The notes below the pieces were generated by a model that worked only from the letters and a program-made list of their open reading frames with translations, made no database searches and was not told the DNA's origin. From contig OZ004609.1 in NCBI GenBank assembly GCA_963924565.1, positions 29,450,001 through 29,514,000 on the forward strand: a DNA stretch of 64,000 bases, given 5' to 3'. Of this stretch, positions 45,401-64,000 are shown in pieces. Both the position numbers and the translations under genes were made by a program. Source of the stretch: Ascidiella aspersa. Lineage: Eukaryota. The stretch's first letter is position 1; every line of letters starts with the position of its first letter.

Positions 45401-48400
45401 GACAGTCTCGGTAAGTTTTTATTGATTTTTGTATGTAGTTGCGGTGTATCGGTGTTGAAAACGGTGTGTGTTGAATGCCCAGGGCTAAAAATCTTTAAAA
45501 TGCACAGTAAATACAACATGTAATACTTTCGTTTTCTAGCATGAGGCGACTACTTGCTAGTGAGAAAGAGTTGCATGAAAAAAAGAAAAAGCACAGGATC
45601 AAAGCTGAAGAAGATACAGCAAACCGTAATGCTGTCTGGTGCAAATACCCCTTGCCAGTCAGAAGTGTGCTGGTCAGTATTGATTCTATTGCTTATCATA
45701 ACCTGTTTGCTGTCACCTAACATTTAAAAAAAAATTTGCACAAGCTAAACTGTATGTTCACGATGTAACATTTTTTGTACTGGACTTGAGGTAATTATCA
45801 TATGGTTTTGCATTTGCTGAAAATAACAGTCTTAAACTTTTTTACTCCACCTAAATCGTATGTTCAGTGTTCACACTAATATTTTTTGTGCGGGAGACTT
45901 GAGGTAATCATCAGGTGGTTTTGCAATAATCTTCAATATTAATTTTTAGGTCTGGAAGCAAAAAGGTGAAGAGTATAGGATCACAGGCTACGGAGGATGG
46001 ATGTGGCTCTCATCCTCGTTCAAGTCAATGAACAAACCATACAAGCGGAAACCACATACCACTGTCAGAAAACCCAAGATCAAACAGGAACAGCTAAATA
46101 GCGAGAAGGAAAAGTCCTTGGAAAAAGATCAATCTCCTCCTGAAACCCCGTCACTGGCGACTGAAACTCCGTCAGTGGCGGCTGAAACTCCGTCAGTGGC
46201 GGCTGAAACTCTGTCAGTGGCGGCTGAAACTCTGTCAGTGGCGGCTGAAACTCTGTCAGTGGCGCCTGAAATTCCGTCAGTGGCAGCTGAATCTCCATCA
46301 GTGGCAGCTGACCCGCCATCAGTGGCAGCTGACCCGCCATCAGTGGCAGCTGACCCGCCATCAGTGGCAGCTGACCCGCCATCAGTGGCAGCTGACCCGC
46401 CATCAGTGGCAGCTGACCCGCCATCAGTGGCAGCTGACCCGCCATCAGTGGCAGCTGACCCGCCATCAGTGGCAGCTGACCCGCCATCAGTGGCTGCTGA
46501 CCCGCCATCAGTGGCAGCTGACCCGCCATCAGTGGCTGCTGACCCGCCATCAGTGGCTGCTGAAGCTCCACCAGTGGCAGCTGAAACTCCACCAGTAGCA
46601 GCTGAAACTCCAACAAGTGTGACACCTTGTAGTGAAGCTCCAGTTAAAACTTACGAAACAAATGAGTCCCCCGACTTGTCAGTCAGCAAGGAAGAGCCAG
46701 AGAAGATGGAAACCTCCGAAACCCCACAAGACAACACAGAAGCTACACCGCCAGCTAACCAAGAAGAGGTGGAGAATACTATACCATCGACAAATAAACC
46801 TGATGAAGATCCAGTCATACACAATGAAACAAAAATGGATGCCTCCCCGAATACAGTAAAAGAAGAGGTTGTGATAGAAGCACCAGCGTCCAAAGCAAAC
46901 CAGGAATCTGAAGAATCTATTGCAACGACAGCAGTTAGTGATAGCCCAAAAGCTCCTGTAGAAGAGACCGATACAAAACCAGAACAATCGGCAAGTGAAG
47001 CAACAGATAACAAGCCATCTGAACCAGCACCTATTGAAGAAAAGACTGGGGATCCCACTCAAGATACAAAACCTTCCTATGTTGATTTGGCAGCTGAGGT
47101 TGATGCGTTAGTTGCCAAATGTGATGTCATTGACATTTCGAAGAATTTGTTAGTACGATCGGTACTATACAATCTGAAATGGCAGCCAACAAAGATTGAC
47201 AAACTGCTACGTTGGAGGTATTTTTTAGATTAAAGTAATCATTCATAAACAGTTGGAATTGTAGAAAAAATTGGGCAAATCTTTGCAAACCTATTGCTAA
47301 GATAAAAAATTTAAATATTGTTACTATGATTTTTATGCAAATTTAACTAAACCTTTACAAGTTGTTGTTATTTCGGATATTTTAAAATTTCAACTAGGAT
47401 TAATAACCTTTCTTTTAAATATCTTTTGTGTTATTCTATGTGTGTAACAATGATTTTGTTTAACTTCAGGATGCTTCAAGAAAACGTTAGGTTAAAAATG
47501 TTGCAGGAAGCCAACAAACCACCGACAGACAAGCCGCCAATTGCAAAATCAGTCGAAGAAGACTCAAGCAATTGCACAACAAACTTAGAGATCAGTGACT
47601 CGGAAACTGATTCGGTTGCGAGTGCAAATTACTTGGATGAGTCGACAGAATCAATCGACAAACCTGCAAGCGTCCCTGGTCCAAGTAACTCTGATTCCGA
47701 TGTTGCTAGTGGTGAAACTAATCCTGAAACTGTGAGTGAGGATATCGCTTCGGTCTGTCAAAGTACTCCACCTGTTGTCAGCTCGGCTCCGATGGTCACA
47801 GATAGTATTCTTGCTGACAAAATCACCAAAAGTTCTGAAATTCCTAGCACTACGCAGACTCAAACTACCTCTCCCAAACCAAGCACAGACCTTCCGGAGG
47901 ATAATATGGAAGTAGATGTTGTTAGTAAACACTGTCCGAAAGACCATGATTCAGCTCTAGCTACAGAACATGGTAAAACAACCACAGACTCTGTACCAAA
48001 TACAGAAACTGTTTGTAATGGCCTTGACAGCCCAATTTCTTCAACTACACTAGAAAAGCATGTGACGACAACCACGACTGTGACCACTACGATGACCAAA
48101 ACAGTTCTTGTCGATTCTGAAACCAGTCAGTCGAGCGAAAATCAAATCTCCACGGTTACAACGTCAAGCACCAAAGTCGAGACAACAACCACTTCCAAAA
48201 TTGATGTGGTATCCACCAGTGTTGCAACGGATTCAAAGTCAGCAGCTACTGAATTAAATTCATTATCACAGCCACCATATACCTCAGCAAAGAATGAAAA
48301 TGACCGTATTTCAGAACCTGAGAAAAGTAAAGTTGTATTCGGTTCCTACGACTCTATTTTTAAATCATCTTCAATGGAGGTCGACCCATCTTTAGGTCTC

Positions 48401-51400
48401 ACAACTGAAGTTACACACCGACAGGTATCCAGGCGTTTCCGTACCGTGAAAAAAGCCGGCATCACAAAGCACATCGAACTCTCTAAGGTGACGCAGTCAG
48501 CAACGTCAAAAACGTGGAAGCTTAAAAGATCACCTGCCGACACAACGAAAAAGAAGCTGAAAGATGTCAAGGTTAGTATTTAGCGGCTAGGAAAGTTAAA
48601 TTGCAATATTTTAAATTTATTATTCGATTTTTTTATTAATATGACAGATGCCTCTTCCCTGGAAGTTTTCTTGTGGAGTTGGAAGAAAAAAGAACATATT
48701 CAGGTAAGTTGTGTTTTTTTACCTAGCGTAAAGGTTTCGGTTGTAAATTGTAATGGGTAGTACAACTTTGTTTGTAGCAATGTTTTTATTCTTAGTCGTT
48801 GTGTGTAAAAATCCAAATGTTAGATTAAAGTCGTATGACAATGAACTTAATAACGTTTTCCTTTTAGACTTCCTTTAAAATGCATCAGAAATTTGGCTTT
48901 AAAAGGAGGGATTGCATGGAATCCAAAAGGTTTTCACATCACTCCAAAGTGGCCTGCAGGCATTGGTAATTCAGATAATAAAGAATACTTATTGTAGTAA
49001 AATTCCAACCGTTTTTTTGTAAAATTTGTATAATAATGTTTTCTGGTTTTCTAACCCTAAACCACTGTGTCTTGGACCTTTATTACTGTAAAAGTCCTGT
49101 AAAGATTTTGTTGCTTGAATATTGTAAAATAAAACCCTTCAATATGCTTGATCCTTGCATTGCAAAACAAGTGAAAAATTAAAATTTTTACTGTTCTTGT
49201 ACAGAGCTGTTTTGGCCATACCCATGTCCACGTCCGACGGTTGGAACAGTTTGGAGGTACAAGATTCAAAACGCTGCCACTTTGTCGGCGATAGCTCACT
49301 TGCTGCGAATTCTTTGGCACAGCATTAGATGGGATGACATCATTACCTCTCCACCAACAGAGTAAGGATTTTCTCAGTATACTTATAGGGTTAAACAGGC
49401 TGGCAGAATCTTGCCAGCCTTCCGGTGCCGAGAATTTTTGGCCTAAATTCTTTGTTTTTTTGGTTGCCCCCTTAAAGTTAAAATAATGTGTTTTCCCGAG
49501 AAATGTATAAAATTTGCCATGTTAAAGTGATTAACAAGGCTGTTAACAAGTAAATCATATTCCAAGACGTGGCGCAAAATTTTTGTGTTACTTTAACAAA
49601 TATATAAATAAGAGACATGCTAAAGTACAACCTGGGGTCTGGAGTAGCACATGTCCGTTTTTTTCATTCCGCAACAATGTTACATAAATAAGCAGTATTC
49701 GGGCGAACTCATGAGCAAACATGCAGCGCAAAACCAGATTAAAAAACGCGAAACAATTTTTTGGTTAAATAGGGGAAATTTTTAATATATATTGCTTAAA
49801 ATAATGATGTTTATAATCAAATTTAATAGGAATTGTTTACCCAGTTTAGAATCACACAGTCAAATGCAACATGCCATAGTATGATTAGTGGCTATGGGCT
49901 GAATAGATTTGCCTGAAACAGAGACAGAATCATAGCAAACCAAGGGTAAAGTTTGCGCAAACCGCGAAATTTTTTTGCATTTACGTAATTAAAATAGCCA
50001 AAAATATAGTTTAAGGCTTAAATGGAACAGCACGGCCTAGCTCCCTAGTACATCCTCTTAAGGCCCTTGCGAATGTTGTATACCTGTCTATTTAACAAGA
50101 ATGGAGACTGAAACAACATGCTTCTGTAACTTTTTTAAGAATGACACAATAAAATTAATTTCTCCAAACTGTAGGGCGTAATGTTACTACATATTCTGCA
50201 TTTCAAAAATATATGTGATTAAGTATGTGTAGAAACAACAATTTTTTCAAGGAAAAATGGATGTTTTAAAAAAAAATTTGGGGGGGGGGTAATTTTTTTT
50301 TGTACCAATTTTTTCGGTTTTCTGGCTCATTCTTTGGCCGACATAGTCGCCAATTCGCCAGCATTCTGCCATACTGGGGTTAACGAATGGATGATTTTCA
50401 AGGGTCCTAAAAACTGTAGTATAAAGTGACATGTTTTGGGTAAAATCTATTTATCTTAAACTTAGTGGAGAAATTGCGAAGGAACAAAAGCAATTCTTTA
50501 GCTTAGAAAGAAAGTTAAAACGGTGCCAGAATCTTACCTTCTTTCTTTCTCGTCAGGGATAATGTTCACGTTGTTCACAATGATGAAGATATCATCACCA
50601 CTGAGTTGCTCAAGCGTCGTGATGTCGACAACAGTGGCTTACATTCAGAATACTTTGTCAGAAGAATACAAATGCCAACTGCTGAATATGACGAAGAAAT
50701 TCCGCAAAGTGAGTAATTATTAACTTTGTGATTTTTACTGATTGATTTATATCTATTGATATGTCGCCTGGTGAGGCGAATTATGTTTTGTGATTTTAGT
50801 TTAAGTGTGTTTTGGCCACAATTTACAAGTTATCTCCAGTGAAACATTTATATTTAAAGAAAATTAAAATAAAATATTAATGTTCAGTTTTGTGTATGAC
50901 CACTAGTTCAAGCATCTTCCATCAGACCTTAATATGTTACTATTAACTGTGTTATATATATGTCAAAAATTTGCGTTGACCCCACTAAGGTTGACAGCAT
51001 TCGGATATATTGCTATCTTGACAGTGATATTTAGTACAAACTATTAAACATTCTAAAGATTTACAATGGTCGCACCAACAATACCCTCCCTAACAGAGAC
51101 TGTTATTTGTCAGGTGAAGCTTACACCCCGTCATCCCGTTCAGGCCTGCGTGCCAGGGTCCGCAATATGGGCTTGAGAGAAAGAACGAAGAGAGAAACTT
51201 CCTCAAGCCCAAGAGTGGAAACGCTCTGGCTACCCGAGGATCGTATTGCTCTTTGGCAGATCAGACAGTTCCATGCAGCGTACGTTGGTTTTTTCTAATA
51301 AACGGGTTAATCCTAATCAGGCTTGTAGCTCACCAGACACCACTAATACAAACTGTAAAGTTTTTTTCAATTTTTAAGACAGATACGTGTGTGTTGGTGA

Positions 51401-54400
51401 TAAAGTCTTAAAGGTCACGTTGTATACAGTATTTTTTGCATTATACAGTTATTTCCACAATTTTATAAAACTTCATCTGACTATGTTCGTTGGTTATACA
51501 ATATTTTGTATGTTGATAAAATGTTATAAAGCGCTATGCTCCGGATATCAGGAAACTTTTCAACTTATACCTTATTATAAAGGAGAACAAAAAGTATCCT
51601 GTTTTTGTATTGTTTTCTAATGCAACATTAATAACATAACTAGTAATTAAATATTGGAAACTTCCAGGCTGAGGACACAGCTACAGCAGAAGACCAACCA
51701 TATCTTCACCTCCACTAACACCCCTCCCAGTATATCGTCAGTGTCTGGTACAAGGTTACGAATCACGCCACACATGGCTAATCAAACGCAAACGCCAGTG
51801 GCAACTAAGCATGTAAGCATGTCTGATAATGTTGTTTTATCCGTCAAATCACCTAAAGGGTGGTCCCTTTTTAATAGTGCGTTAAATACGACTGGCTGTC
51901 TCTTGGCAGCTTGCGTTTATCAGCAAGACAACACTCTGTGCCTGGCCTTTTCCTGTGGCCAGCTTCAATTTTTCATCTTGCCACAATATTATAGAGATGC
52001 TAGTGCTCCAGCTATATACATATAGTTGGTTTGCTTGGACATCTCTGACAACTTTTAAAAACACTAGGATGGGGTTTCTCCTCCAACGTTAATATTTAGC
52101 CGTCCCTGTAATCTGTATAAAGTAGAATCAACAGTGTTTTAGGTTTCTAACCAATATTTAACCATTTCTTTCCTCCAGGTAACCGTCACCCCTGCTTTGT
52201 TACAACAAGCGGCTGCCCTTCATCGAACACAAATGGACACTTCGGCTAATCAGAGAAACCTTGATGCGGTATTTGACTGACACCATAATAAATATTATAT
52301 TCTAAATCAGGGGTCAGCGGCCTAAGGCACTGATTATACAAGGTTTAAAATAACAATCAGTTTCTGCGTGTGTTTGGATTTACATGCATGTGAACCACCT
52401 ACATAATATAACATTAAACAAAAGATGCAACAATGCCTAAAACTTTATTACGGTTTTAATCAGCCATAATCCGCACATGCTTAAAACAACTGATTCACGA
52501 TTTAATGTTTGTTCGTGTTAGTAAACCAGCATTTTTTTTGTTTACTTCTATTTAGCTTCGTGAATATATTACAGTTTTTTTCTTATGATTATTAATAAAA
52601 AGTTGTTTTTTTATGAAAAGGTTTTTCAAAATTGTTTGAATTATTGGCAAAAAAAACAACTTTTCTCTGCATTTGTAGATGAAGAAGTTCGTGGTGAAGA
52701 CGAACTTCGGTAACGCAGCAAAGCCAAATGAACAACACCTTATACGTACTCAGCAAGGTGCGTCCTGGAAAACGCTCTTTAAAATTAACGTCATAAGCTA
52801 AAAACCACCAAAAAGTATTTAAGAATAACAAAAGACAAATACTAGTGTGCAAAAATATAATAACGAACATATTGCGGTAGGGAAACATCAGTGTTTATTA
52901 TTTTTTAGGTGCCATGCGCACGATAACTATCAAATCACCGAATACAGGCCAACAGCAATTCATTACATTAAAGGCACCCACACCAGGTATGGAGTAAAAT
53001 AAATAAATAAATTTTTATGTGTCTGTTGTATTTTTGCATTTGCTTTCTGTCCAATGAAACAAGTATTCAAACACAACGTGGATAGCATTGTTGAAACTTT
53101 TTAATATGCATAACAAGTCTGTGTCTCTGTCTTCTCAACTACCACTATTATGGGAAAAATTAAATCTGCGTTTTTTGTCACACGTTTGTTTTTTGCGTCT
53201 AATCATACTAATCTTACCTTTATTTTTATTTTTGATTAGTTTGAAAAGTCGGCGAGGTCGAACTGGAAAGTTACAGCTGCTTTCTAATAACTCGTAGAGA
53301 ATAAATCAGGGGTTCTTAAACTTTTTTTAAATACAGACTCCTACAAAAATTGGTTCGCGTGGACCAGGGTCGCCGTAAATAAAACAAGAAATACTTAAGA
53401 AAATTGCTGTTTTGAGTTCAGCAAATAGGAAACTCAAATGAAGTCTAACATCAAGTAGAAGGCGCCATGACGTTTTTTTTTCAATTCGACTATTTATTTT
53501 TAAATTATGCACTACTATTTTATTTAATCCTTTTGGACCCCTAAAATTGTCCACGTAACTCCAAGGTGCTACAGACCCCAGTTAAAGAACTAAAGTAATC
53601 CAGCGGAAAATGGCGTGTTTACAGGTCAAAACCAGTCGACCCCAATCTCTGGCGCTTCGGTTGGTAACACATTCATTCAGGTGGCTGGCGGACAAGCTCT
53701 CATCAAACCTAGCACCCAGTACATTGTACAGGGAAACAAGATGATACCTGGCAGACAAATCATCTTCAAACAGAGTAGGATAGTTATTTTTTTATTTTTT
53801 TCCACACTTCCAACTATTTCGGCTAACGCTAACTTTAAGTTACACCCTTTTTTGGCTCTATTATCCAATTTAAGAAACTATGCCATGTCATTATAAACAC
53901 TTACTGTTTTGGCAAAGTTAATTTTTAAAAAGAGAAGAAATCTCCTTGCCCTCGCATGTAAATGACGTTAAATAAAAATTTTTCTGTCTCAACAAAAGTC
54001 AGTCGTTTCTTTGTTCTTAAGAGAAATATATTTCGCCACAAAATAAGGCATCATCTGTCTTAACTGTTTTGTTTGTGTTACTTTATTTAAAACACAGTTA
54101 CATTTCGTAAAACCGATTTGATTTTACAATACTTGAACGTTGCAAAATTTTTATACATTTTATGACGAAACCACCTTGCTTGATCAATGATCAGGCTTTG
54201 ACGCAAAAAAATTTCAGGCATACATTTTATGAAAAAAAAATTATGTCACTCTATACGTATTTAAACATTTGCTCGGAATTAGTAGCTACTTTATGTTGGA
54301 TAAGGTAATTATGCTTTAGTTATTTTATGCATACAATCATATCTTCCCAGGTCTTTCGGGTAATTACGCTGCTGCCAACCAACAACCAAAGGCAGTGCTT

Positions 54401-57400
54401 GCACCTTCGCATCCCACAATCAGGTTAGTTGCAGGAAAATGTATAGAACTGAATAAAAGTTATAGCAGTTTAATTCTCTTGTTGTTCAACATACCGTGAC
54501 GTTTTTCGTGTTAACAGGTTGGGGAGCAAGCCGTCTCCTGTGATTGTTACGCCAGCTCCCACGCCCCCTAAAGTTACCCCAACTCCACAACCTCAGCCCC
54601 AGCAACAGGTAACCCTTAAATGATCATTTTTACCCTCTTTACCCTATAACTAAGGATTTTGTTTTGGGGGGGGGGGGATTAAAATATATAGGGAATGGTA
54701 GCTAACCTAGCTGTTTTCGTTGTGGCAGAAAAAATATAATATTATCTTAATATCCGGTATGTCTAAAAAGGGCAGTAGGAGCTAAATCTTTGCCACTGAA
54801 GTTTTTTATATCAATTTGCAAAAGGCCCTAATTTAATTGCCAGAAGTACGTTAAAAATGCCTAATTGTGTACAATTTACAATTTTAAATCATTGGTTATA
54901 GTAGCGTTTTCTGGTATAGCGAAAATGTGATTGCATCGTTGGCCGCACGCGGGCCGCATTAAAAGGTTGTGCAGGCCTGCTTTACAGTTACAAAAATACA
55001 GACACTTGTATGTTCTGACAAATTCACATCGAGAATTTTCTCTGTACGCAGAGCACCCCGGTTGCGGCTGGCAAGTCGTCGACTAGGATGCAGGTGACAC
55101 TTTCCAGCGCCCAACTCAGCCAGCTTATGAAGGTTGGAACCGACACCAGGGTTCGAGTCTCCATCAAGCTCAGCGACGGAAGGCCAGGTGAGATTAAATG
55201 CACTGAAGGAACTACCATGTTGAAAGGAGTAAAGAGATATTCGAAACGTTTAAAATGCTTTCTACTTCTATATGACCTATTCTTTCCACTTGGGAATAGT
55301 TTTTTTTATAAAACTCGAGGAGTTGTTTTCTGTTAGTGCATTGTACAACTAAACGGTGATGTTACACATATAAAAATTATCTCACTTTACGACTTTTGAT
55401 TCATTTGATCAATCTACTGCCAGACGTAGCTTTTTTTATTGACATCCTCGTTTTACAAGTAAAGCAAAAAACGAACTTTATTGTTTATCGTGATTGTGAT
55501 TAATAACAATAAAGCTTTTTAAATCCATATCTGTTTTAGACAACGTATTCACGAGTAAGGTAGAAGTTTTGTACAACGCCTAACGTTAAAAGCATCGTTT
55601 CGAGTTGTAACGCTTCCAATGTCAATCACCTAGGTATCGGGCAACTTCAGGTGATTCCCCCCGGGAGCCAGGTGAACCCAACTCAAGGTCAGCAGTTGAT
55701 GCAGTGCAAGGTCGGCAACGAAGTTCGAAAGTTCCTACTCACGGCCCTATCGGAAAAAGGTCGGTTTCAAGTCGAACCCTTTGTCTGCCGTTATTGTGAA
55801 GAACTGGGAGCCTTTGCCATTGGATAAAGGGCGATTTGCCGGGCTTGCCACTCTTTTATTAGAATTAGATAGGGGTTGTTTCGCCTGCGCAAGTTATTTT
55901 TTTAGTCCAGCGAGTTAAACTGCCTCCTTCTTAAAATGCGCATGGGCGTTTTAAACTTCTCCGACTGTCGTTCAAAAGTATACCCTGTGCTACAAATAGG
56001 TTACTTTATAACTTAGACTATTTTACCAAATTAGGTAACGTTTTTTATCTTATAAATTTAAACACAGCGCTTAAGCCTACCTCCTTTTCTCCAACAGTCC
56101 CATCAACCCCCTCCACTCCTTCGGCAACCACCCCCACTACCCCGGCGCCGCTCCTGCCCCCCATCTCGGCCCTGCTTTCGCCCCCCGGCGTCACAGCGGC
56201 CAACGAGGTCAGCGTTGAGGCCCCGACCCTCAAGCACCGGCTCCTGCAGCTCCAGCAACGGCACCAAGGCCTGATGCGTCAGCCCGGAACCGACGTTAGG
56301 CAGCTGTTGACCGACAAGGACCCTCTGTGGGGCGGAAGGTAGGGGTGTTCTACAACTACGTTTTTTATGTTTTGGTGGGTTAGTTCAGGGGTGGCCAATG
56401 AGTTAAGGACCAATAGCCGCATGTTATACTTTGTTAACCGCGAAGAGCCACACTTTACACATTGGCATCAATTTTCGTAATCGCATTGCTTAAGTTTGAA
56501 ACCACCTTCTTAGGCCGTCGGGCGCCAGCGAGAAGGCTCATGTTCCCGAGCGAACGTCGAAGAAAGAAATGTCGGAAAAACCAAGAAGAAAGCACATTCT
56601 CTCGAGAGAGACGAGGGAGGAACAGCAAAGGTTTGTTCAAGTTGTTTGGTTAAAGCAAATTTGTGTTCGCAATCCGATAATTTTCGGTCAGGCAAGATAA
56701 CACTCTGTGCCGGGCCTGCTTAGTGGCCTGTTTCAATTTTTCGTCTTGCTACATTAGACCAAGTCGCTTACATTTCCTGTGTTTTGCATGTTTAGCCAGG
56801 GTGTAAGTTGACTTGTACAACACTCTAAAAAGCATTAATGCATGGTGGCCACGAGGTCTTTGATTGTCTTTAAACTGATTTACGTATTGAAAAGCCTTTA
56901 AAAAACCCTGTGTTTTTTTAACACTTTCTTATTGTGTTGCCTATGATATTTATAATGTTCAGGGTTGTTCCTAAGCAAAAATTTACACTCGCCAGTTTGG
57001 CGAGCGGCTATCAATCAGCACTCGCCAGGACGAAATAACACTCGCCAAATTGATTGGCACGCCGTCTGCAAATTTCCGTCCTAGCGCGGTCATTTCTTGG
57101 GTTATCGTTAACCTGTCTTTTCTATACGTAAACATCAGAGATTGGAAACTTTAGATTTTGCGCGGGAGAGACAATTTTGCAGCTTGGCTGTAATAATTGT
57201 AATAACGTCTTTGGTTGTTTGCCGGTAAACGACTTTTTTAAACGGGCCAAAGAGTCTTTATTACGAGCTTCGAGCGTGACTTCGACCAACCTTATTATTT
57301 GTGTAGTGTTGAAGGTATTTGCGTCTTAGTGTATAAGGAAATAACTGGCGCTAAGTAATATTTCGCTTAGTAGTGGTGCTTAACACAAGTTGTCCTACAC

Positions 57401-60400
57401 CAACTAATTAAATTTCTCGCCGGAGCCAGTCGCCAGTCTGGCGAGTGGGTGTCAATCAGCACTCGCCAGGAGCGATTTGCACTCGCATTGGCGAGCCCAA
57501 CCCTGATGTTTTTTTGTTTTTTTCGATTTATATTAAAAAAATCATTGTGATTTTGTCTTTGGAAAGCGATAATTTTTTTTGAAAAGTCCTTAAATGTCTT
57601 TGAATTGTTAAATAAAAATGTGTGGCAATCCTATAATATCTAAAATTAAAAAACAAGTTGTTTAACTTAGACAAGCAAGTCTAAACATATCAAATATTCT
57701 CGAGTCATATGGTTATAAACACATAGTTACAAATTTAAAAAAGAAAAACAACTGTCATTAGCGCGTAAACGGAGAACACAATTTAGTACAGGCGTTATGA
57801 CAATCCTTGTTGTCAATTGTCATTGTTGTTTTCTTAATTTTTTTCAAACCCCAGTGAGTATTAAAAAGTATACGGTAATGTGGTAAAAAAGCAGTAGTTC
57901 TTCCTCCTTAACTAGTCTTTGTAAATGGCCGTGGTTGACTAATTCTAAATAGGGCAATCATGTGGCGCTATATAAAGACAAATCGCACAACCGCATATTA
58001 GCATTGTCAGCCACTGCAACTGAAACAAACAAGCATCAGTAGAAAGGCTAGAGCTCCTTACTGCTTGAAGCACATACACAACATGAAGAGCAAACCAAGA
58101 ATAAAATCACACGAGCCCAACCCAACACATGAAATAAACCACAGAGAGATCAGACAACATAGAAAACTTAACAAAATTAGATAACTTAACAATACTGATT
58201 TAAACCTAACGAAACTAATGTTTATCTTCCAAGGACAGTTGGCGTCCATATCAGTTTCGAAATTTGGTAATGCGTATGCGTACGTCGGACTCAGGACTCG
58301 GGTAGTTTTACGCGGTCTTACACGAGTCCCGAGTCCAACTCCGACTCCGCAGCCCTGGTATATGAAAGAATTCGTTTTTCCTCGACTTGTACACCGATAC
58401 CAAGTGCGTCATTTTTTTATCTAAACCTAACGACTGAGATGTTTGTCTTCCCAGGAAAGCGGTCGTCCAGCAGGTGATGAAGTCGCTCTTGGATCGGATC
58501 GAGCGCAAGGAGGAGCTGGATGCTCGCAGGAGGAGAAAAGAGGCGCACATCGAGCAGCAGAAGAGGAAGAGGGAGAGCCTCGACGAGGTAAAGATCAAAT
58601 AAACGAAACAGAACTGTGTTTAAGTGACTTTGAGATTGCATCCGTTGGAAGCAATTATTTCTGTTTTACTGGTTAGTGAGAACTGTGCCTTCTTACTATG
58701 TTGAAAACGAATAGAGAACGTTCAAAATGGTACCTACTTCTCTGTGGGCTGATATTTTTATTACGTCGTACTACAACCTCCAACCATTATGCTCAACAAC
58801 GTTCAAAATACAAAGCGATGAACGTTGTTTTATCGCTGTGTAGTTTGAACGTGTCTCGCACATTTTTTATCTCTTTTTTCTTAGTGTCATTTTATTTTGC
58901 GCCCTGTTGGCTGTGTGTGTCAAAAAGGCTTGCCGTGTAGGAAGCCGAAACGTTAGTTGAAGAAATATATGCCAGACGAACCTATTTCAAATATACTATG
59001 CCTGGTAGCAACAGCATATTTATTTATTTACACACATTGCTGATAAAAATAAGGGTCTAGTAGAAATCAATGCTTTGTTTGCCTTACTAACATATCGCAA
59101 AACGTTTGTGTGTCCATTCCCACTTTGGCATCGCCTTGAAGCAATCACAAACATAATGTCATATTGTGCGACACGCCATCATCTATTGTGTAAATAGGTG
59201 CATTATGCAGTGGCGCGTTAGTTAAACGTAAATCAATTAATCAATGTCTACCCTTGCTTCTCTAAACGAGTGCACCGCGACCCTTTTTCACTTGCGGCAC
59301 ACTTAACAGAGAAAAAACAATTCGGCGGAAAATCTACAAAATATATATCAATCGATAGAAGACAACATAAACAAATATTCAGGGCAACTGAGAGAAAAAG
59401 GACCCTTTCAGTCCAAAAATTTGACGTAATATCTTACGGCCTTTCTAAATCATCTATGCTTTTTAAGCAGCAACCAGGTTTTAACTTCTGCAATGCGAAC
59501 CAAGAAGAAAATATAGGACAAAAACTGCAAATTATAGAATGACAATTCATGGTTTTTAAGGGTATGGTTATTCTCCCCTTCAGCTTTGGTATAAAATTCG
59601 AATATCTTTGTCTTATATTGTATAGCGTAGACGCGCGAATCACTTGGTACTTTATTTTCTTAATCCGGCAATTGAACGTAAATCTACTGATTGTAGAAAT
59701 GTTGCCTTCCTATAATGTTACCCTAATTCTAGTGATTCTTTATATGTACCCTTATAAAAAACGCAAGTAAAACACCTACGGAAACGCCGCGGCGCATCTG
59801 GCATCTTCTCGCGTCACACCAGTTAAGGAGCACTGTTGTAAACCTCCCTAACTTTACCAGGTGAAGTCGCAGCAGCGTTTCCACCACCGACTGTTGAACG
59901 CGCTGCGCAAACACGAGGACCAAGTCAAGCAGGAAATCCGTAAGCGACGCAGCATCACCGAGAAGTACATGACCAGGGTCGTCGAGGTGCGTACTTTAAT
60001 GTTTTTGTAATATTTAAAACAGTTTCCTCTGGCAATATATATATATGCCTGGTAGAAACAGCATATTTAATGTTTTTGTTGTTGTTTGGTAATATATTTC
60101 GGACGAGCATAGATCGTTTGCTTCCTTGATTGGCTGCAGTGGTCGTATGCTAAGTTGTAAAAAACTAGAAAAAGTGGATTTTTGTGTTGAGCTCACATGT
60201 GTTGGTATGTCTTCGTTACTGTGCGTTTTTAGGGCTAATTTTCGTACAAATAAACAAATTCAGTATCTAACTATCTTTTACACGTTAAGGCAATCTAGAA
60301 AATGTGAAACGATTCCTAATTAGAAATTATTGCGGCAACCAAATGCTAAAAGCCAAGGCAAAACTGCTATATATTTTGAAAATTACTATTTTATTTTAAA

Positions 60401-63400
60401 AGCCATTTTCAAATGTGAATAACCAGAAATTGAAAAAAAAATGTAGCACTGGTTTCCAAGGTGAAACTCAAATCAAAGAAACAGCGCGCTATAGGTCTAA
60501 CAAAGCACACCTTACTTACCCAATACACTTGGCGTGGTTTAGAACGAGTTGTACGAAGACCAGCTCAAGCTCGGCAGGAAGCGCCCGATCGCCTCCAGCA
60601 CGCCCCTAGCGGCCACTCCGGTGCGGCACGCCACCAAGCGGCCGCGCAAGTCAGGCAACCTTTCGGCGAGCGAGTTCCCGCCGAGCAGCTACGGCAACGT
60701 ACTGGCCGAAAGCAACCGTCGCAAGTCGAATTCGCCCAAGAAGGGCCAGCAACGCCTTCTTCAGGAGCAGATAGATCCCGTGGCCGCAATCAAGCGTGAA
60801 GCCGCCGCGTCGATCGAGGATGACGTCACGGCCGGTGCGCCAGCCAAGAAGAAGAAGATGATCAACACGTCGAGCAAGCTCTACTGCGTCTGCAAGACTC
60901 CCTACGATGAGACCAGGTAAGCGTAAAGCCGACTTCCGTAACCAAGTATGCCGCCACTCAGTTGTCAAGCCTTATTTTTATACCGCTTTTGATTTCTGTT
61001 TTTTTTTTCGTCTCTATAAAAATGTGTTTTTTAGATTTACTGAAACGTTTCACAAACAGTAAAGGATGAGAAACGTGTATTTCGCAGAAATAAAATCTGC
61101 CCGTTGCTCATAAAACCTATTTGCCTATAGTTAGTCGTGTGTTTGAATTAAAAGCTTTGGAATACCACTGTAATCGGGAGTGATATTTTTCTCGAGCTTG
61201 CTTTGCTTGCGTAATTTATCTACCATTAGGTCTAACGGATTTCGCCCTTTAACCTCCAGGTTCTACATTGGCTGCGACCTGTGCATGAACTGGTTCCACG
61301 GCTCGTGCGTCGGCATCTCGGAGAAGAAGGCCAAGGCGATGGAGACCTGGGTGTGCCGGGACTGCGCCAAGGAACAGTCGGCACCGCAGCAGGAGCTCTA
61401 CTGCTTCTGCAGGACGCCCTACGACGACGCCCAGTAAGTTATGGCCCCGTTAGTTTTTTTTGTTACAAACGTTTTTTTAGTATTTTCCTAGTTTGAAATG
61501 TGGTAGGTTTTTCTGTCGCACCCTTCGCCAGTCAACACCATTTTACATACAGATACAAAATTTTATAAATTTGCCCTTTATAAGATTGGCGCAAAACCAG
61601 CGAAAACAAGTTGTCGACTTTTAATAGTTTACTATAGTCCTGGTATCCTCGTACACAGCTAGCATGATAAATATTTTTCTTATTCTGCGTTAAATAGACT
61701 AACTGCAAGATAACACTCTGTGCCAGGTCTTTCTCGTGACCTGCTTCAATTTTTCGTCTTGCAAAATTGAATTTTTCGATCGTTCTTTGTATCTCCAACT
61801 TGTTGTTAGTTGTGAATGTGGATACATAGTTCGGTCGACACAACTGAACGTCAACGGCAAAAAAATCCTTGCTAGGAACAACTCGAATGTTCTATGTAGT
61901 AAATGCGAGTTAGAAATTTGCTTGAAATGTGCCCTAAACTCGAAAGACACCGACTTAACTGTAAAAAAAAACAAGAATCTTTATTTACAACCTTTATTTT
62001 TTTTTTATCTTTATTTTGACGTGAGTTTTGCTTAATCGTCACTCCCCGTAAAACAAACTATCAAGCTTTCGACTTTTAAAAGGTAAATTTACTTATGAAA
62101 TTGAAAAATTAACAAACAAGCTAAATAATCTTGCCTACCTTAAACCAATTTGTTGCCATATAACCTGAATAACATGACCTTGACGTATTCCGTTTGCCCT
62201 GCTTTTTTCCAATGTTAATGGCATTAATTGGTATAAAAAGGCTGTTCTCACTCTGATGTAATATATCGGTCATCGGAGTAAACTACGTAGTAAGAATAAC
62301 AAAACCCATACAGAAGTAGGTAACATAATAAGCAAATAAGCATATGCTACCTACTTCTGTATGGGTTTTGATATTCTTACTTACTACAACCTCCAACAAT
62401 TCTACTCCGGAGTAAAACACAATTTACCGGGCATCTCTTTGACCCGGCGCACCCCAAGTAAACAAACCACCACACCTCAGCTGTGCTTAGCTAAAGTGTA
62501 AAAACAACATATTAAACATCAACGAGCTATAAACACTAAAGAAAACACCTCTCCTGTACTTAGGTTCTACATCGGGTGCGACGCATGTCAGGACTGGTAC
62601 CACGGCTCGTGTGTTGGTATTAGCGAGGAAGAGGCGTCGGGAATCGAGAGCTACACTTGCCCGAGGTGCAAGGAGAACTCGCGCGACGCCTCACAAGAGG
62701 GCGCACTGAGCGAGCGCGACAACTTCAACCTGACCAAGATCGTTCGCCACCTCTACGTGAGTCATGTTTAGGGGATATCAAAGTATGTGAAAAATTGAAA
62801 TTCAGGCTGCATTTCGTGTAATTTGTTAAATCAAACAGGATGCTAATCCTCGTTTAGTCCTAACACATTTGCAATTGACTTATAATGCAATATAAAATGT
62901 TTAATGTCATACAAAATGCGGCCATTGTTGTCACGAACAGACATTAATTTCATGCTTGTGTAGTTTTTTTAATTAAAACGATTCTTATCCTTATTGGCCC
63001 GAGCTGACTTCATGTCCAACGCCTCCCTTGTTTAACTCAAGAAGATTTATAAATGGATGAATCGTCCGTATATGCTCTGCTTTTTGCTTAGTGTTGCAGC
63101 TGTATAATGGTGTTATTTAAAACCATTGGCTCTTATAAAATGGATTGAAAGTTTGTTGAATAAAAAGCTGCTCCGAACAAATTATTCTACAGACCATAGA
63201 TGTACTATAAACTTTCTTATCATCCAGGCAACTCGTTATCAACCGATTTTCATTGTTTTTTTATCCTAATTACCAATGATAAGTAAAGTGTGACTTGGGC
63301 AACACGCAGTCCTTCTTCGACTGAACACTTTGTCGTTTATTGTTTCAGGGCCACAAGATGGCGTGGCCGTTCCTAGAGCCAGTTCGCGAGGAAGACGCAC

Positions 63401-63433
63401 CTAACTACTACAGGGTGGTCAAGCGCCCGATGG
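36457..63433 (+). CDS. BPTF: Nucleosome-remodelling factor subunit BPTF/NURF301; 3' end continues beyond the window
   Basis: About 40 exons, e.g. 36457-36587; 37238-37475 (AT hooks KRGRPKK, KGRPR); 38565-39451 (DDT: [20 protein letters not shown]); 39679-40717 (PHD: [36 protein letters not shown]); 44477-44651; 45187-45410; 45950-47217 ([18 protein letters not shown]); 49205-49361 ([17 protein letters not shown]); 56514-56630; 58455-58587; 59861-59986; 60543-60916; 61260-61433; 62564-62756 (two PHDs); 63349-63433 (bromodomain [16 protein letters not shown]). Some internal low-complexity exon boundaries are approximate. Confidence 0.95.
42822..43135. mobile_element. hAT-type MITE, family 1 copy
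   Basis: CAGGGGTTCTTAAACT..TTACCGCGGACCCCTAAATTTTT and GGGGTCCATTGACCCCAGT..CCCTG match 8280-8625. Confidence 0.75.
45029..45106 (+). ncRNA. SNORD7: Box C/D snoRNA guiding U6 snRNA A47 2'-O-methylation (mgU6-47 type)
   Basis: C box ATGATGA 45035-45041; D box CTGA 45097-45100; short terminal stem. The 11 nt before the D box (TAATCTTCTCT) are complementary to U6 AGAGAAGAUUA, and the D+5 rule gives A47 in human numbering. Lies ~85 nt upstream of the 3' splice site at 45186. Confidence 0.85.
45751..45927. repeat. Diverged two-copy intronic duplication
   Basis: TATGTTCA..ATTTTTTGT..GACTTGAGGTAAT(T/C)ATCA..TGGTTTTGCA occurs twice, ~110 bp apart. Confidence 0.65.
46142..46612 (+). repeat. Coding 21-bp minisatellite in BPTF, 22 units of a 7-aa repeat (12 x DPPSVAA core)
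   Basis: Unit GACCCGCCATCAGTGGCAGCT x12 (46310-46561), flanked by 8 upstream and 2 downstream diverged ETPSVAA-type units, all in frame. Confidence 0.97.
51923..52053 (+). ncRNA. SNORA28: Box H/ACA snoRNA, SNORA28-like copy 1
   Basis: 5' hairpin GCAAGA/TCTTGC with pocket AACACTC + ATTTTT and upper stem CTGGCC/GGCCAG; H box ACAATA 51983-51988; 3' hairpin AGAGATG/CATCTCT and CCAGCTATA/TATAGTTGG; ACA at 52048-52050. Confidence 0.85.
53307..53594. mobile_element. hAT-type MITE, family 1 copy (degenerate right end)
   Basis: CAGGGGTTCTTAAACT start; GGACCCCTAAAA..GACCCCAGTTAAAGAAC end. Confidence 0.65.
56692..56822 (+). ncRNA. SNORA28: Box H/ACA snoRNA, SNORA28-like copy 2
   Basis: Same 5' hairpin (upper stem CGGGCC/GGCCTG); H box ACATTA 56751-56756; 3' hairpin CAAGTC/GACTTG, CTTACA/TGTAAG, CCTG/CAGG; ACA at 56817-56819; 131 nt, like copy 1. 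Confidence 0.85.
56960..57505. mobile_element. MITE with CAGGGTTG/CAACCCTG termini and CACTCGCCA/TGGCGAG subterminal repeats
   Basis: 8-bp TIR flanked by ATGTT on both sides; a ~45-bp block CGCCAGT.TGGCGAG.GG.T.TCAATCAGCACTCGCCAGGA is present near both ends. Confidence 0.75.
58727..59025. repeat. Interspersed repeat family (CCTACTTCT..GATATT..TACTACAACCTCCAACC..ATGCCTGGTAGCAACAGCAT); pieces also at ~1000-1090, ~1447-1530, ~60025-60070, ~62275-62410
   Basis: Shared motifs CAGAAGTAGGTA, TACTACAACCTCCAAC and ATGCCTGGTAG(C/A)AACAG at the listed loci. Confidence 0.6.
61705..61845 (+). ncRNA. SNORA28: Box H/ACA snoRNA, SNORA28-like copy 3 (variant H box)
   Basis: Same 5' hairpin with upper stem CAGGTC/GACCTG; H-box position reads AAATTG (one mismatch to ANANNA); 3' hairpin TCGATCG/CGGTCGA and TGTATC/GATACA; ACA at ~61840. 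Confidence 0.75.
62287..62387. repeat. ~42-bp near-perfect inverted repeat (hairpin)
   Basis: GTAAGAATAACAAAACCCATACAGAAGTAGGTAACATA pairs with TATGCTACCTACTTCTGTATGGGTTTTGATATTCTTAC across a ~15-nt loop. Confidence 0.9.
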
Positions 63434-63947
63434 GTAAGTCTTTCTGCTGCGTAAACCGTGTCTTCTGAGTTATTATGGCTAAGTTACTGTCAACACCTAA
63501 TCAAAAAATAATGTGTAAGAGTAAGTGAAACGTTTTTAAGGGCGTAATAACTGCGTTCTATCGAACTATTTTTCTATGTATGGCCAGCTAAACTAATATG
63601 CGCAGAGAGTGTATAATTTAACTTAATCGGTTGTGTTATGATTTCACAAAATCATAGTAACTTAGCTTTAAAATTATGCAAAACTCGTAAAACTAAAATC
63701 GATGAAATTGTGTATAGATTACAACAATCGAAATTCTCACAATTGTTAAATTTCGCCTTGAGTTTCGGTAATGGCTTCCGCTATAACTCTTTGTTAACCT
63801 GTCAGAGTCGTAGACCACTTCTGTATCACCTTACCAAATCATATGCCATTCTTATTTGCGTAAGGCCCCTTTGCGTTAGTTTTCCTTGTGGGTGTCGAGC
63901 TAAACCTAGTTTCTTCGGGTCGTCACGGCCATAGATATATCACATAC

Positions 63948-64000
63948 GCAAGCCAACACTCTGTGTCGGGCCTTTTCAGTGGCCCGCTTCAATTTTTCGT
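63948..64000 (+). ncRNA. SNORA28: Box H/ACA snoRNA, SNORA28-like copy 4 (5' hairpin only; truncated by window end)
   Basis: GCAAGCCAACACTCTGTGT CGGGCC TTTTCAGT GGCCCG CTTCAATTTTTCGT; the boxes would lie beyond 64000. Confidence 0.7.

What the first reader, a model, noticed from the sequence alone, without database searches (positions are those of the whole stretch)
51923..64000. Four intron-dispersed H/ACA snoRNA paralogues with a covarying 5' hairpin aimed at one 18S pseudouridine site
Seen: a ~60-nt unit recurs at 51923, 56692, 61705 and 63948 in four different BPTF introns. The pocket strands AACACTC and ATTTTT are invariant, while the upper stem shows compensatory changes (CTGGCC/GGCCAG, CGGGCC/GGCCTG, CAGGTC/GACCTG, CGGGCC/GGCCCG), which points to selection on RNA structure rather than a decaying transposon. 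The pocket sits 15 nt from an ANANNA box in copies 1 and 2. Known: 18S rRNA has the conserved GAAAAAAUUAGAGUGUU, and the pocket leaves the second U unpaired, equivalent to human Psi815 (SNORA28) and yeast Psi759 (snR80), from recalled numbering. Inference: intron-to-intron amplification of a functional guide.
Basis: partly seen in the sequence, partly recalled or inferred. Interest (0 to 1): 0.8.

Follow-up and report, generated by a model that had tools for sequence, protein, structure and literature searches.

The report
Four intronic SNORA28-type H/ACA snoRNA genes
Four introns of a BPTF-like gene each carry a small guide RNA gene of a well-known kind (H/ACA snoRNA, SNORA28/snR80 type), all aimed at the same conserved uridine of 18S ribosomal RNA; this looks real but ordinary, and RNA production could not be tested.

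Summary
A roughly 62-nt hairpin recurs four times on the + strand (window 51922, 56691, 61704, 63947). These are the only four copies found in the 308-Mb genome.

- **Structure:** each copy is the 5' half of a full hairpin-hinge-hairpin-ACA unit.
- **Target:** the invariant pocket pairs 7+6 Watson-Crick bp around U766 of this genome's own 18S, 15 nt from the H box. That site corresponds to human 18S-815 and yeast 759, the 5'-pocket target of SNORA28.
- **Conservation:** flanks and 3' hairpins are not alignable, while the 5' hairpins are 83-90% identical. None of 17 guide or closing columns varies.
- **Covariation:** it is not significant with four copies alone. It becomes strong once 15 distinct homologues from metagenome contigs are added (10 of 15 pairs compensated).
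- **Host gene:** the host has DDT, PHD and bromodomain exons, the BPTF/NURF301 architecture. Homologues elsewhere sit in PRPF19 and COPG, so the host gene varies by lineage.

Limits:
- No copy reaches Rfam's SNORA28 cut-off.
- None keeps SNORA28's second guide, the one for 18S-866.
- Copy 3 has an off-consensus H box (AAATTG).
- The one RNA run available was too shallow to test expression.

Verdict: new members of a known kind; modest interest.

The parts
51923..52053 (+). Copy 1, a full H/ACA unit. 5' hairpin 51923-51981, with pocket strands AACACTC at 51930-51936 and ATTTTT at 51968-51973. H box ACAATA at 51983-51988. Closed 3' hairpin. ACA at 52048-52050. It lies in a short intron of about 320 nt (about 51859-52178, inferred from open frames and GT/AG).
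   Evidence: (89 bits). Sub-threshold full-length Rfam matches to SNORA77 (22.5 bits) and snopsi18S-841 (20.2 bits, the clan of SNORA28).
56692..56825 (+). Copy 2, a full H/ACA unit. Pocket strands at 56699-56705 and 56736-56741. H box ACATTA at 56751-56756. Closed 3' hairpin. Tandem ACAACA at 56817-56822. In two other individuals the SNP 56712 G>A turns the G.U pair of the upper stem into A-U.
   Evidence: (90.1 bits). Full-length SNORA28 match of 26 bits, E 0.6, below the 65-bit cut-off.
61705..61845 (+). Copy 3, hairpin-hinge-hairpin-ACA. Pocket strands at 61712-61718 and 61749-61754. AAATTG at 61764-61769 stands in place of the H box and is off consensus at its last position. ACACA at 61838-61842. 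It lies in the intron that splits the second C-terminal PHD finger (exon ends at about 61434; next exon starts at about 62560).
   Evidence: (91.5 bits). Sub-threshold SNORA35 match of 23.2 bits.
63948..64000 (+). Copy 4; only its 5' hairpin lies inside the window. Pocket strands at 63955-63961 and 63992-63997. The unit continues beyond the window (L004 1494-1658): H box AGATTA at window-equivalent 64007-64012, a long branched 3' domain of about 100 nt, and ACA at 64107-64109. It lies in the intron after the first bromodomain exon (63349-63434).
   Evidence: (92.4 bits)
38964..63434 (+). Host gene exons on the same strand. DDT domain (38964-39200), PHD finger (39679-39915), two C-terminal PHD fingers (61174-61434 and 62502-62768), bromodomain start (63349-63434) and bromodomain end beyond the window (L009 1427-1852). 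This is the BPTF/NURF301 architecture.
   Evidence: Pfam on single exon translations.

Best explanation
These are four paralogous box H/ACA snoRNA genes lying in sense orientation in four introns of a BPTF/NURF301-like gene.

Inferred mechanism, from the established H/ACA pathway:
1. After splicing, the intron is trimmed to an RNA of about 130-165 nt, bound by dyskerin/Cbf5, Nop10, Nhp2 and Gar1.
2. The shared 5' hairpin opens its pocket onto 18S rRNA. AACACUC pairs with GAGUGUU and AUUUUU pairs with AAAAAU.
3. That leaves U766-A767 unpaired at the base of the upper stem, 15 nt from the H box.
4. U766 is then isomerised to pseudouridine.

This is the site served by the 5' pocket of SNORA28 in vertebrates (human 18S-815, yeast position 759). 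The four 3' hairpins are unrelated in sequence, mostly closed stems with no convincing rRNA target. They most likely serve only as the structural second half of the particle together with the ACA box.

- **Shown here:** the sequence, copy number, fold, complementarity, spacing, conservation pattern, homologues elsewhere and host gene.
- **Inferred:** processing, protein binding and the pseudouridine itself.
For: - **Copy number.** Exactly four copies exist genome-wide, all on the + strand inside one gene.
- **Fold.** The MFE fold of each copy is hairpin-hinge-hairpin-tail with an open 5' pocket.
- **Complementarity.** The pocket pairs 7+6 Watson-Crick bp, with no G.U, to the genome's own 18S around U766, with 15 nt to the box in all four copies.
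- **Boxes.** Copies 1, 2 and 4 carry ANANNA boxes, and all four have ACA after the 3' hairpin.
- **Selection pattern.** The hairpins are 83-90% identical. None of 17 guide or closing columns varies, against 15 of 42 elsewhere in the hairpin (Fisher p 0.0025). The 3' hairpins and the 300-nt flanks are not alignable.
- **Covariation within the four.** Two upper-stem pairs covary. A population SNP at one of them (56712 G>A) keeps the pair intact.
- **Homologues.** Metagenome contigs yield 20 matches to the model, 19 of them outside this genome, giving 15 distinct sequences. In that set 10 of 15 pairs carry compensatory changes, 94% of cells are paired against 78% in shuffles (0 of 500 shuffles reach it), and slid controls pair 21-45%.
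- **Family signal.** SNORA28 is the best Rfam family for copy 2 and for the homologues (26-43.5 bits, full length). The L033 homologues also keep SNORA28's 3' antisense element CCTATTCC.
- **Literature.** SNORA28 guides 18S-815 and 18S-866, and 815 is found in every vertebrate examined (PMC6984369). The yeast equivalents are 759 and 808 (PMC8522698).
Against: - **No expression evidence.** The only RNA run had 0 reads on copies 2 and 3, but the host exons were covered less than 1x, so the result is uninformative.
- **Rfam threshold.** No copy reaches any Rfam gathering score.
- **Copy 3.** It has AAATTG in place of ANANNA.
- **Copy 4.** Its 3' domain is unusually long and branched.
- **Weak covariation alone.** Within the four copies the covariation is not significant.
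- **Ascertainment.** In the metagenome homologues the pocket sequence was fixed by the search pattern, so its invariance there means nothing. That alignment was also fitted to the model.
- **Search depth.** The genome-wide covariance-model search scored only 150 of about 126,000 first-look candidates.
Confidence: 0.85

Rival explanations
1. Only some of the four copies are working genes. Copy 3 (H box AAATTG) and/or copy 4 (oversized 3' domain) are decaying or poorly expressed paralogues, kept similar by recency or gene conversion rather than by selection on each copy.
For: Copy 3 lacks the last A of ANANNA, and copy 4 has a branched 3' domain of about 100 nt. The 3' hairpins of all four lack a pocket with an rRNA target above the shuffled background. 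Four guides for one site are redundant.
Against: Copies 3 and 4 score as high on the model as copies 1 and 2 (91.5 and 92.4 bits). They keep all 17 guide and closing positions while their flanks are unalignable. Copy 3 carries a fully compensated C-G to U-A change. An independent homologue in a PRPF19 intron also reads ANANNG (ACACTG) at the H-box place. A contig from another individual carries copy 3's 5' hairpin unchanged (record 13).
Confidence: 0.3
2. The unit is a fragment of a mobile element (SINE, MITE or retroposed snoRNA family) that landed in these introns by chance and has no function.
For: The window holds real high-copy repeats close by, for example the palindrome at 62293-62377 with very high word depth in DNA runs.
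Against: The 308-Mb genome holds four copies, none in antisense and none outside this gene. DNA-run depth over copies 2 and 3 is single-copy, at about 59 and 106, the same as neighbouring unique sequence. Guide positions are invariant and stems are compensated.
Confidence: 0.02
3. The conserved hairpin is an intronic cis-element of the host pre-mRNA, for example a splicing or stability signal, and the match to 18S is coincidental.
For: All copies lie in one gene and no processed RNA has been shown.
Against: The same hairpin with the same box spacing occurs in introns of unrelated genes (PRPF19, COPG) in other organisms. In each case it is followed by a second hairpin and ACA. With the pocket fixed by the fold, a chance 13-bp Watson-Crick match around a U in 10 kb of rDNA is expected roughly 4 times in 100,000 (my own estimate, not a tool result), and the matched site is a known conserved pseudouridine.
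Confidence: 0.03

Closest known systems
SNORA28 (ACA28; Rfam RF00400, clan CL00033) of vertebrates
   Same: It has the same H/ACA architecture and the same 5'-pocket target, human 18S-815 (PMC6984369). The antisense letters are nearly the same in the Rfam consensus (ACACUCUGUG ... CAAUUU). It is the best-scoring Rfam family for copy 2 and for the metagenome homologues.
   Different: The scores (26 bits here, up to 43.5 in homologues) are far below the 65-bit cut-off. None of the four copies carries the 3' antisense element for 18S-866, although the own 18S keeps that site. This genome has four copies with four unrelated 3' hairpins. The host gene is BPTF-like rather than the vertebrate host.
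snopsi18S-841 / snoR66 (Rfam RF00545, same clan) and yeast snR80
   Same: These are H/ACA guides filed in the same Rfam clan as SNORA28. Copy 1 gives a full-length match of 20.2 bits. Yeast position 759 is the equivalent target (PMC8522698).
   Different: The match is well under the 50-bit cut-off, and genome-wide the family's best hit lies elsewhere at 23.7 bits. The assignment of snR80 to yeast 759 is from my memory and was not tested here.
Multi-copy intronic snoRNA isoforms within one host gene
   Same: Several paralogues of one guide sit one per intron, in sense orientation, in a single host gene. Homologues in PRPF19 and COPG contigs also come as two copies 0.7-2.6 kb apart. Lineage differences in copy number, order and intron position of snoRNAs are described in PMC6984369.
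   Different: Here only the 5' hairpin is shared. In the L033 and L022 homologues the two copies also share their 3' hairpins.
SNORA13 / snR35 (guide for the hypermodified 18S uridine, yeast 1191)
   Same: The 3' hairpin of copy 2 holds 12+5 nt complementary to UUGAC-UC-AACACGGGAAAU of the own 18S. That is the U of GAC-psi-CAACACG (PMC3045603).
   Different: The box spacing is 10 or 13 nt, not 14-16. The pocket would need a refold costing about 15 kcal/mol (-22.0 against -7.3). The genome has two genuine SNORA13 genes above Rfam's cut-off that use a normal 6+6 pocket. This is most likely not a working guide.

Membership tests
Box H/ACA snoRNA (class) | Hairpin-hinge-hairpin-tail secondary structure | tested here: met
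   The MFE folds of all four copies give two hairpins separated by a single-stranded hinge, plus a short tail.
Box H/ACA snoRNA (class) | H box ANANNA in the hinge | tested here: inconclusive
   Met in copies 1, 2 and 4 (ACAATA, ACATTA, AGATTA). Copy 3 reads AAATTG.
Box H/ACA snoRNA (class) | ACA box 3 nt from the mature 3' end | tested here: inconclusive
   ACA follows the 3' hairpin in all four copies. The mature 3' end is unknown because no reads covered the loci.
Box H/ACA snoRNA (class) | Bipartite antisense pocket around an unpaired U-N, 14-16 nt upstream of the box | tested here: met
   7+6 Watson-Crick bp to the own 18S around U766-A767, with 15 nt to the H box, in all four copies.
Box H/ACA snoRNA (class) | Accumulates as a stable small RNA bound by dyskerin/Cbf5 | not testable with these tools
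One RNA run was available. Host exons were covered less than 1x and the copies had 0 reads.
SNORA28 (Rfam RF00400) | Score at or above Rfam's gathering threshold (65 bits) | tested here: not met
   Copy 2 scores 26 bits. No hit passes the cut-off in the window or the genome.
SNORA28 (Rfam RF00400) | 5' pocket directed at 18S-815 (yeast 759 equivalent) | tested here: met
   for the pairing; PMC6984369 and PMC8522698 for the family's target. That own U766 is the same site as human 815 rests on the identical local sequence in Rfam's consensus guide and on my recall of the human 18S context.
SNORA28 (Rfam RF00400) | 3' pocket directed at 18S-866 (antisense CCUAUUCC) | tested here: not met
   The element is absent from all four copies and present in the L033 homologues. 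The own 18S keeps GGAATAATGGAATAGG. PMC6984369 reports that this second function is variable even among frogs.
BPTF / NURF301 (host gene) | An N-terminal DDT domain and PHD finger, and two C-terminal PHD fingers followed by a bromodomain | tested here: met
   Pfam hits on single exon translations: DDT 7e-11, PHD 5e-6, 2e-9 and 1e-9, and bromodomain 6e-10. Orthology was not tested by a tree.

The most novel reading that the evidence does not exclude
The four genes are a natural case of hairpin-level modularity. One selected 5' guide is combined with four independently acquired or re-evolved 3' hairpins. One of these, in copy 2, is an emerging or redundant guide for the uridine that becomes the hypermodified m1acp3-pseudouridine of 18S helix 31.
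Probability: 0.15. Interest if true: 0.5.

Novelty: new member of a known kind. Interest (0 to 1): 0.3.

Why it matters
The result adds four unannotated guide RNA genes, and a new host gene, to a deeply conserved snoRNA family. It shows that Rfam's vertebrate-centred SNORA28 model misses them.

It is a clean example of selection acting on one hairpin of an H/ACA RNA while the other half drifts. It also shows the family changing host gene between lineages (BPTF here, PRPF19 and COPG elsewhere).

It does not change what is known about how such guides work. Redundant intronic paralogues and variable second pockets are already described for this very family (PMC6984369).

Tried and rejected
1. **Rfam at gathering thresholds.** Nothing was found in the window. 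Genome-wide SNORA28 and snopsi18S-841 searches found nothing above cut-off.
2. **Expression.** The one RNA run (X3) covered BPTF exons less than 1x and gave 0 reads on copies 2 and 3, so it is uninformative.
4. **BPTF as host elsewhere.** tblastn with the window's exon translations found no BPTF exons in the metagenome contigs that carry homologues. L032 is simply this same genome.
5. **Paralogous introns, or duplication that carried flanks along.** Only a 16-nt motif shared by copies 1 and 3 turned up (TGCGTTAAATA-GACT, p 0.016 before correcting for 12 comparisons). The look-alike GTAAGG...GCGTTAGTTTT motifs near copies 3 and 4 were not significant.
6. **Targets of the 3' hairpins in the rDNA unit.** Nothing rose above shuffled controls for copies 1, 3 and 4. 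The copy 2 match to the yeast-1191 site was rejected as a probable non-guide on spacing and folding energy and because true SNORA13 genes exist.
7. **Weak extra hits.** The fifth model hit (C6:26045694, 27.6 bits) has a different pocket. The best genome-wide SNORA28 hit (C3:32216683, 27.3 bits) holds ACCTATTCC but shows no clear hairpins or ACA box.
8. **snRNA targets** for the 3' hairpins were not searched.


Full report
**Observation**

The pattern AACACTCTGTG-N(15-35)-TTCAATTTTTC matches four times in the window, all on the + strand. It matched in none of 100 shuffles. The same pattern finds only those four places in the whole 308-Mb assembly, with none on the reverse strand and none in the reversed control.

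A covariance model of the 67-nt hairpin plus H box scores the four copies at 89-92 bits. The next genomic hit scores 27.6 bits and has a different pocket. One caveat applies: only 150 of about 126,000 first-look candidates were scored.

**Anatomy**

Each hairpin is the 5' half of a complete H/ACA unit. The unconstrained minimum-free-energy folds give the following layout:
- a lower stem (GCAAGA/TCTTGC);
- an open internal loop formed by AACACTC and ATTTTT;
- a 2-bp closure (TG/CA);
- a 3x3 internal loop and a 6-bp upper stem;
- a single-stranded hinge;
- a second hairpin;
- ACA.

The units are:

| Copy | Coordinates | Box in hinge | Note |
|---|---|---|---|
| 1 | 51923-52053 | ACAATA | |
| 2 | 56692-56825 | ACATTA | |
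| 3 | 61705-61845 | AAATTG | off consensus |
| 4 | 63948 to about 64112 | AGATTA | runs past the window end; about 100-nt branched 3' domain |

It fails at the last position of the box in copy 3.

**Target**

This genome's 18S genes contain TTTGAAAAAATTAGAGTGTTCAAAG. With the pocket as folded:
- AACACUC pairs with GAGUGUU and AUUUUU pairs with AAAAAU;
- that makes 13 Watson-Crick pairs with no G.U;
- U766-A767 is left unpaired, 15 nt upstream of the H box, in all four copies.

A loose scan over all possible pockets is noisy, with shuffled rDNA reaching scores of 10.5-15.5. The weight therefore rests on the fact that the pocket given by the fold is the one that matches.

The site is a known one. 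SNORA28 is described as the guide for 18S-815 and 18S-866, and 815 is present in every vertebrate examined (PMC6984369). The yeast equivalents are 759 and 808 (PMC8522698). Rfam's SNORA28 consensus carries the same antisense letters. The link between snR80 and yeast 759 comes from my memory only.

**Selection**

The four 5' hairpins are 83-90% identical. None of the 17 guide or closing columns varies, against 15 of 42 other hairpin columns (Fisher one-sided p 0.0025).

Outside the hairpin and H box nothing aligns:
- Pairwise local alignments of the 3' hairpins are no better than shuffles.
- Alignments of 300 nt upstream and downstream are likewise no better.
- The one exception is a 16-nt motif shared by copies 1 and 3, which does not survive correction for multiple tests.

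Two upper-stem pairs covary, one with four pair types. With four sequences this is not significant.

Two DNA runs from other individuals add a small point. The only difference inside copy 2, 56712 G>A, converts the G.U of that covarying pair into A-U.

**Homologues elsewhere**

A scan of metagenome contigs with the pocket pattern returned 58 loci. The model accepts 20 matches. One of them, L032, is this same genome at 100% identity over 2 kb.

The remaining sequences give 15 distinct rows. In these:
- 10 of 15 pairs show compensatory changes;
- 94% of cells are paired, against 78% in shuffles (0 of 500 shuffles reach this);
- slid controls pair only 21-45%.

The pocket in these sequences was fixed by the search pattern, and the alignment was fitted to the model. 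The lower and upper stems were free, however, and they covary (for example GCAAGA/TCTTGC, GCGAGG/CCTCGC, GCAAAG/CTTTGC). An ANANNA-type box sits at the same spacing.

SNORA28 is the best Rfam family for these homologues too (32.6-43.5 bits, still under the 65-bit cut-off). The L033 group keeps SNORA28's second antisense element, CCTATTCC. This chain of evidence ties the window copies to the SNORA28 family.

**Host genes**

Exon translations were searched one by one. They give DDT, one PHD, two C-terminal PHD fingers and a bromodomain on the + strand. That is the BPTF/NURF301 architecture.
- Copy 1 sits in a short intron of about 320 nt.
- Copy 3 sits in the intron that splits the second C-terminal PHD finger.
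- Copy 4 sits in the intron after the first bromodomain exon.

Exon borders are inferred from open frames and GT/AG, not from reads.

In other organisms the homologues lie in PRPF19 (U-box and Prp19 WD40 exons, two copies) and in coatomer gamma (two contigs, one of them with two copies). The host gene therefore differs by lineage, which published work describes as common for snoRNAs (PMC6984369). Earlier notes of this scan call the genome ascidian and report U17 copies in ARID1 introns. I did not test either statement.

**The 3' hairpins**

None of the four copies carries the 18S-866 antisense element, although the own 18S keeps that site. A pocket scan of the rDNA unit gives nothing above shuffled controls for copies 1, 3 and 4.

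Copy 2 gives a 12+5 match to UUGAC-UC-AACACGGGAAAU. This is the uridine that becomes m1acp3-pseudouridine, since yeast 1188-1198 reads GAC-psi-CAACACG (PMC3045603). I treat this as probably non-functional, for three reasons:
- The spacing to ACA is 10 or 13 nt.
- The open-pocket form costs about 15 kcal/mol relative to the closed stem (-22.0 against -7.3).
- The genome has two bona fide SNORA13 genes above Rfam's cut-off with a normal pocket.

The simplest reading is that the four RNAs are single-guide H/ACA RNAs with a structural 3' hairpin.

**Expression**

This was not testable. Only one RNA run was offered. About 6% of it was read, host exons were covered less than 1x, and copies 2 and 3 had no reads.

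**Verdict**

The copies are not transposon debris. They are four redundant intronic guides of the SNORA28/snR80 functional type.

They fail Rfam's own score threshold and lack the family's second guide. I therefore file them as new, divergent members of a known kind rather than as textbook SNORA28. Interest is modest.

Noticed in passing
window 62293-62377: A near-perfect 85-nt palindromic hairpin in the same intron as copy 3. It gives sub-threshold matches to several miRNA families on both strands. Word depth in the DNA runs is very high (about 92,000-166,000 against about 60-100 for unique sequence) and many chimeric joints to 58770-58794 appear. It looks like a high-copy MITE-type repeat, not a miRNA gene.
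   Followed up: partly
window 45029-45106: A box C/D snoRNA-like unit in another intron of the same gene, with ATGATGA and CTGA boxes. The stretch before box D (AATCTTCTCT) looks complementary to the AGAGAAGAUU segment of U6 snRNA; that U6 sequence is from my memory. There is no Rfam match at E up to 1. Another reader of this scan has already noted it.
   Followed up: partly
L073 1501-1631 (G000:C2:24483931-24484061) and L074 1501-1631 (G000:C1:39702781-39702911): Two nearly identical SNORA13 orthologues above Rfam's cut-off (59.5 and 53.8 bits). Their 5' pocket (TGTGTT / GTCAAA) fits the GAC-U-CAACACG site of the own 18S.
   Followed up: partly
window 56776-56787 and 56807-56811 (3' hairpin of copy 2): ATTTCCTGTGTT plus GTTGA are complementary to 18S UUGAC-UC-AACACGGGAAAU, the site of the hypermodified pseudouridine. 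This scores above 30 shuffled controls, but the box spacing is wrong and the hairpin is strongly closed.
   Followed up: yes
L075 (G000:C3:32216683-32216807): The best genome-wide SNORA28 match (27.3 bits). It is an AT-rich stretch holding ACCTATTCC, the antisense element for the 18S-866 equivalent, but it shows no clear double hairpin or ACA box. Where this genome encodes a guide for that site, if anywhere, remains open.
   Followed up: partly
window 56894-57681 and 58273-59060: Stretches of the long intron downstream of copy 2 have DNA-run word depths in the tens of thousands, indicating high-copy repeats inserted in the intron. One individual's contig skips 56960-57516, so this may be an insertion polymorphism.
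   Followed up: no
L022 2517-2645 and 5114-5243; L030 9020-9087 and 9761-9828; L033 7165-7300 and 8659-8790: In other organisms the same snoRNA also occurs as two same-strand copies 0.7-2.6 kb apart, in PRPF19 and COPG introns. Unlike in this window, the two copies in the L033 and L022 contigs share their 3' hairpins.
   Followed up: partly
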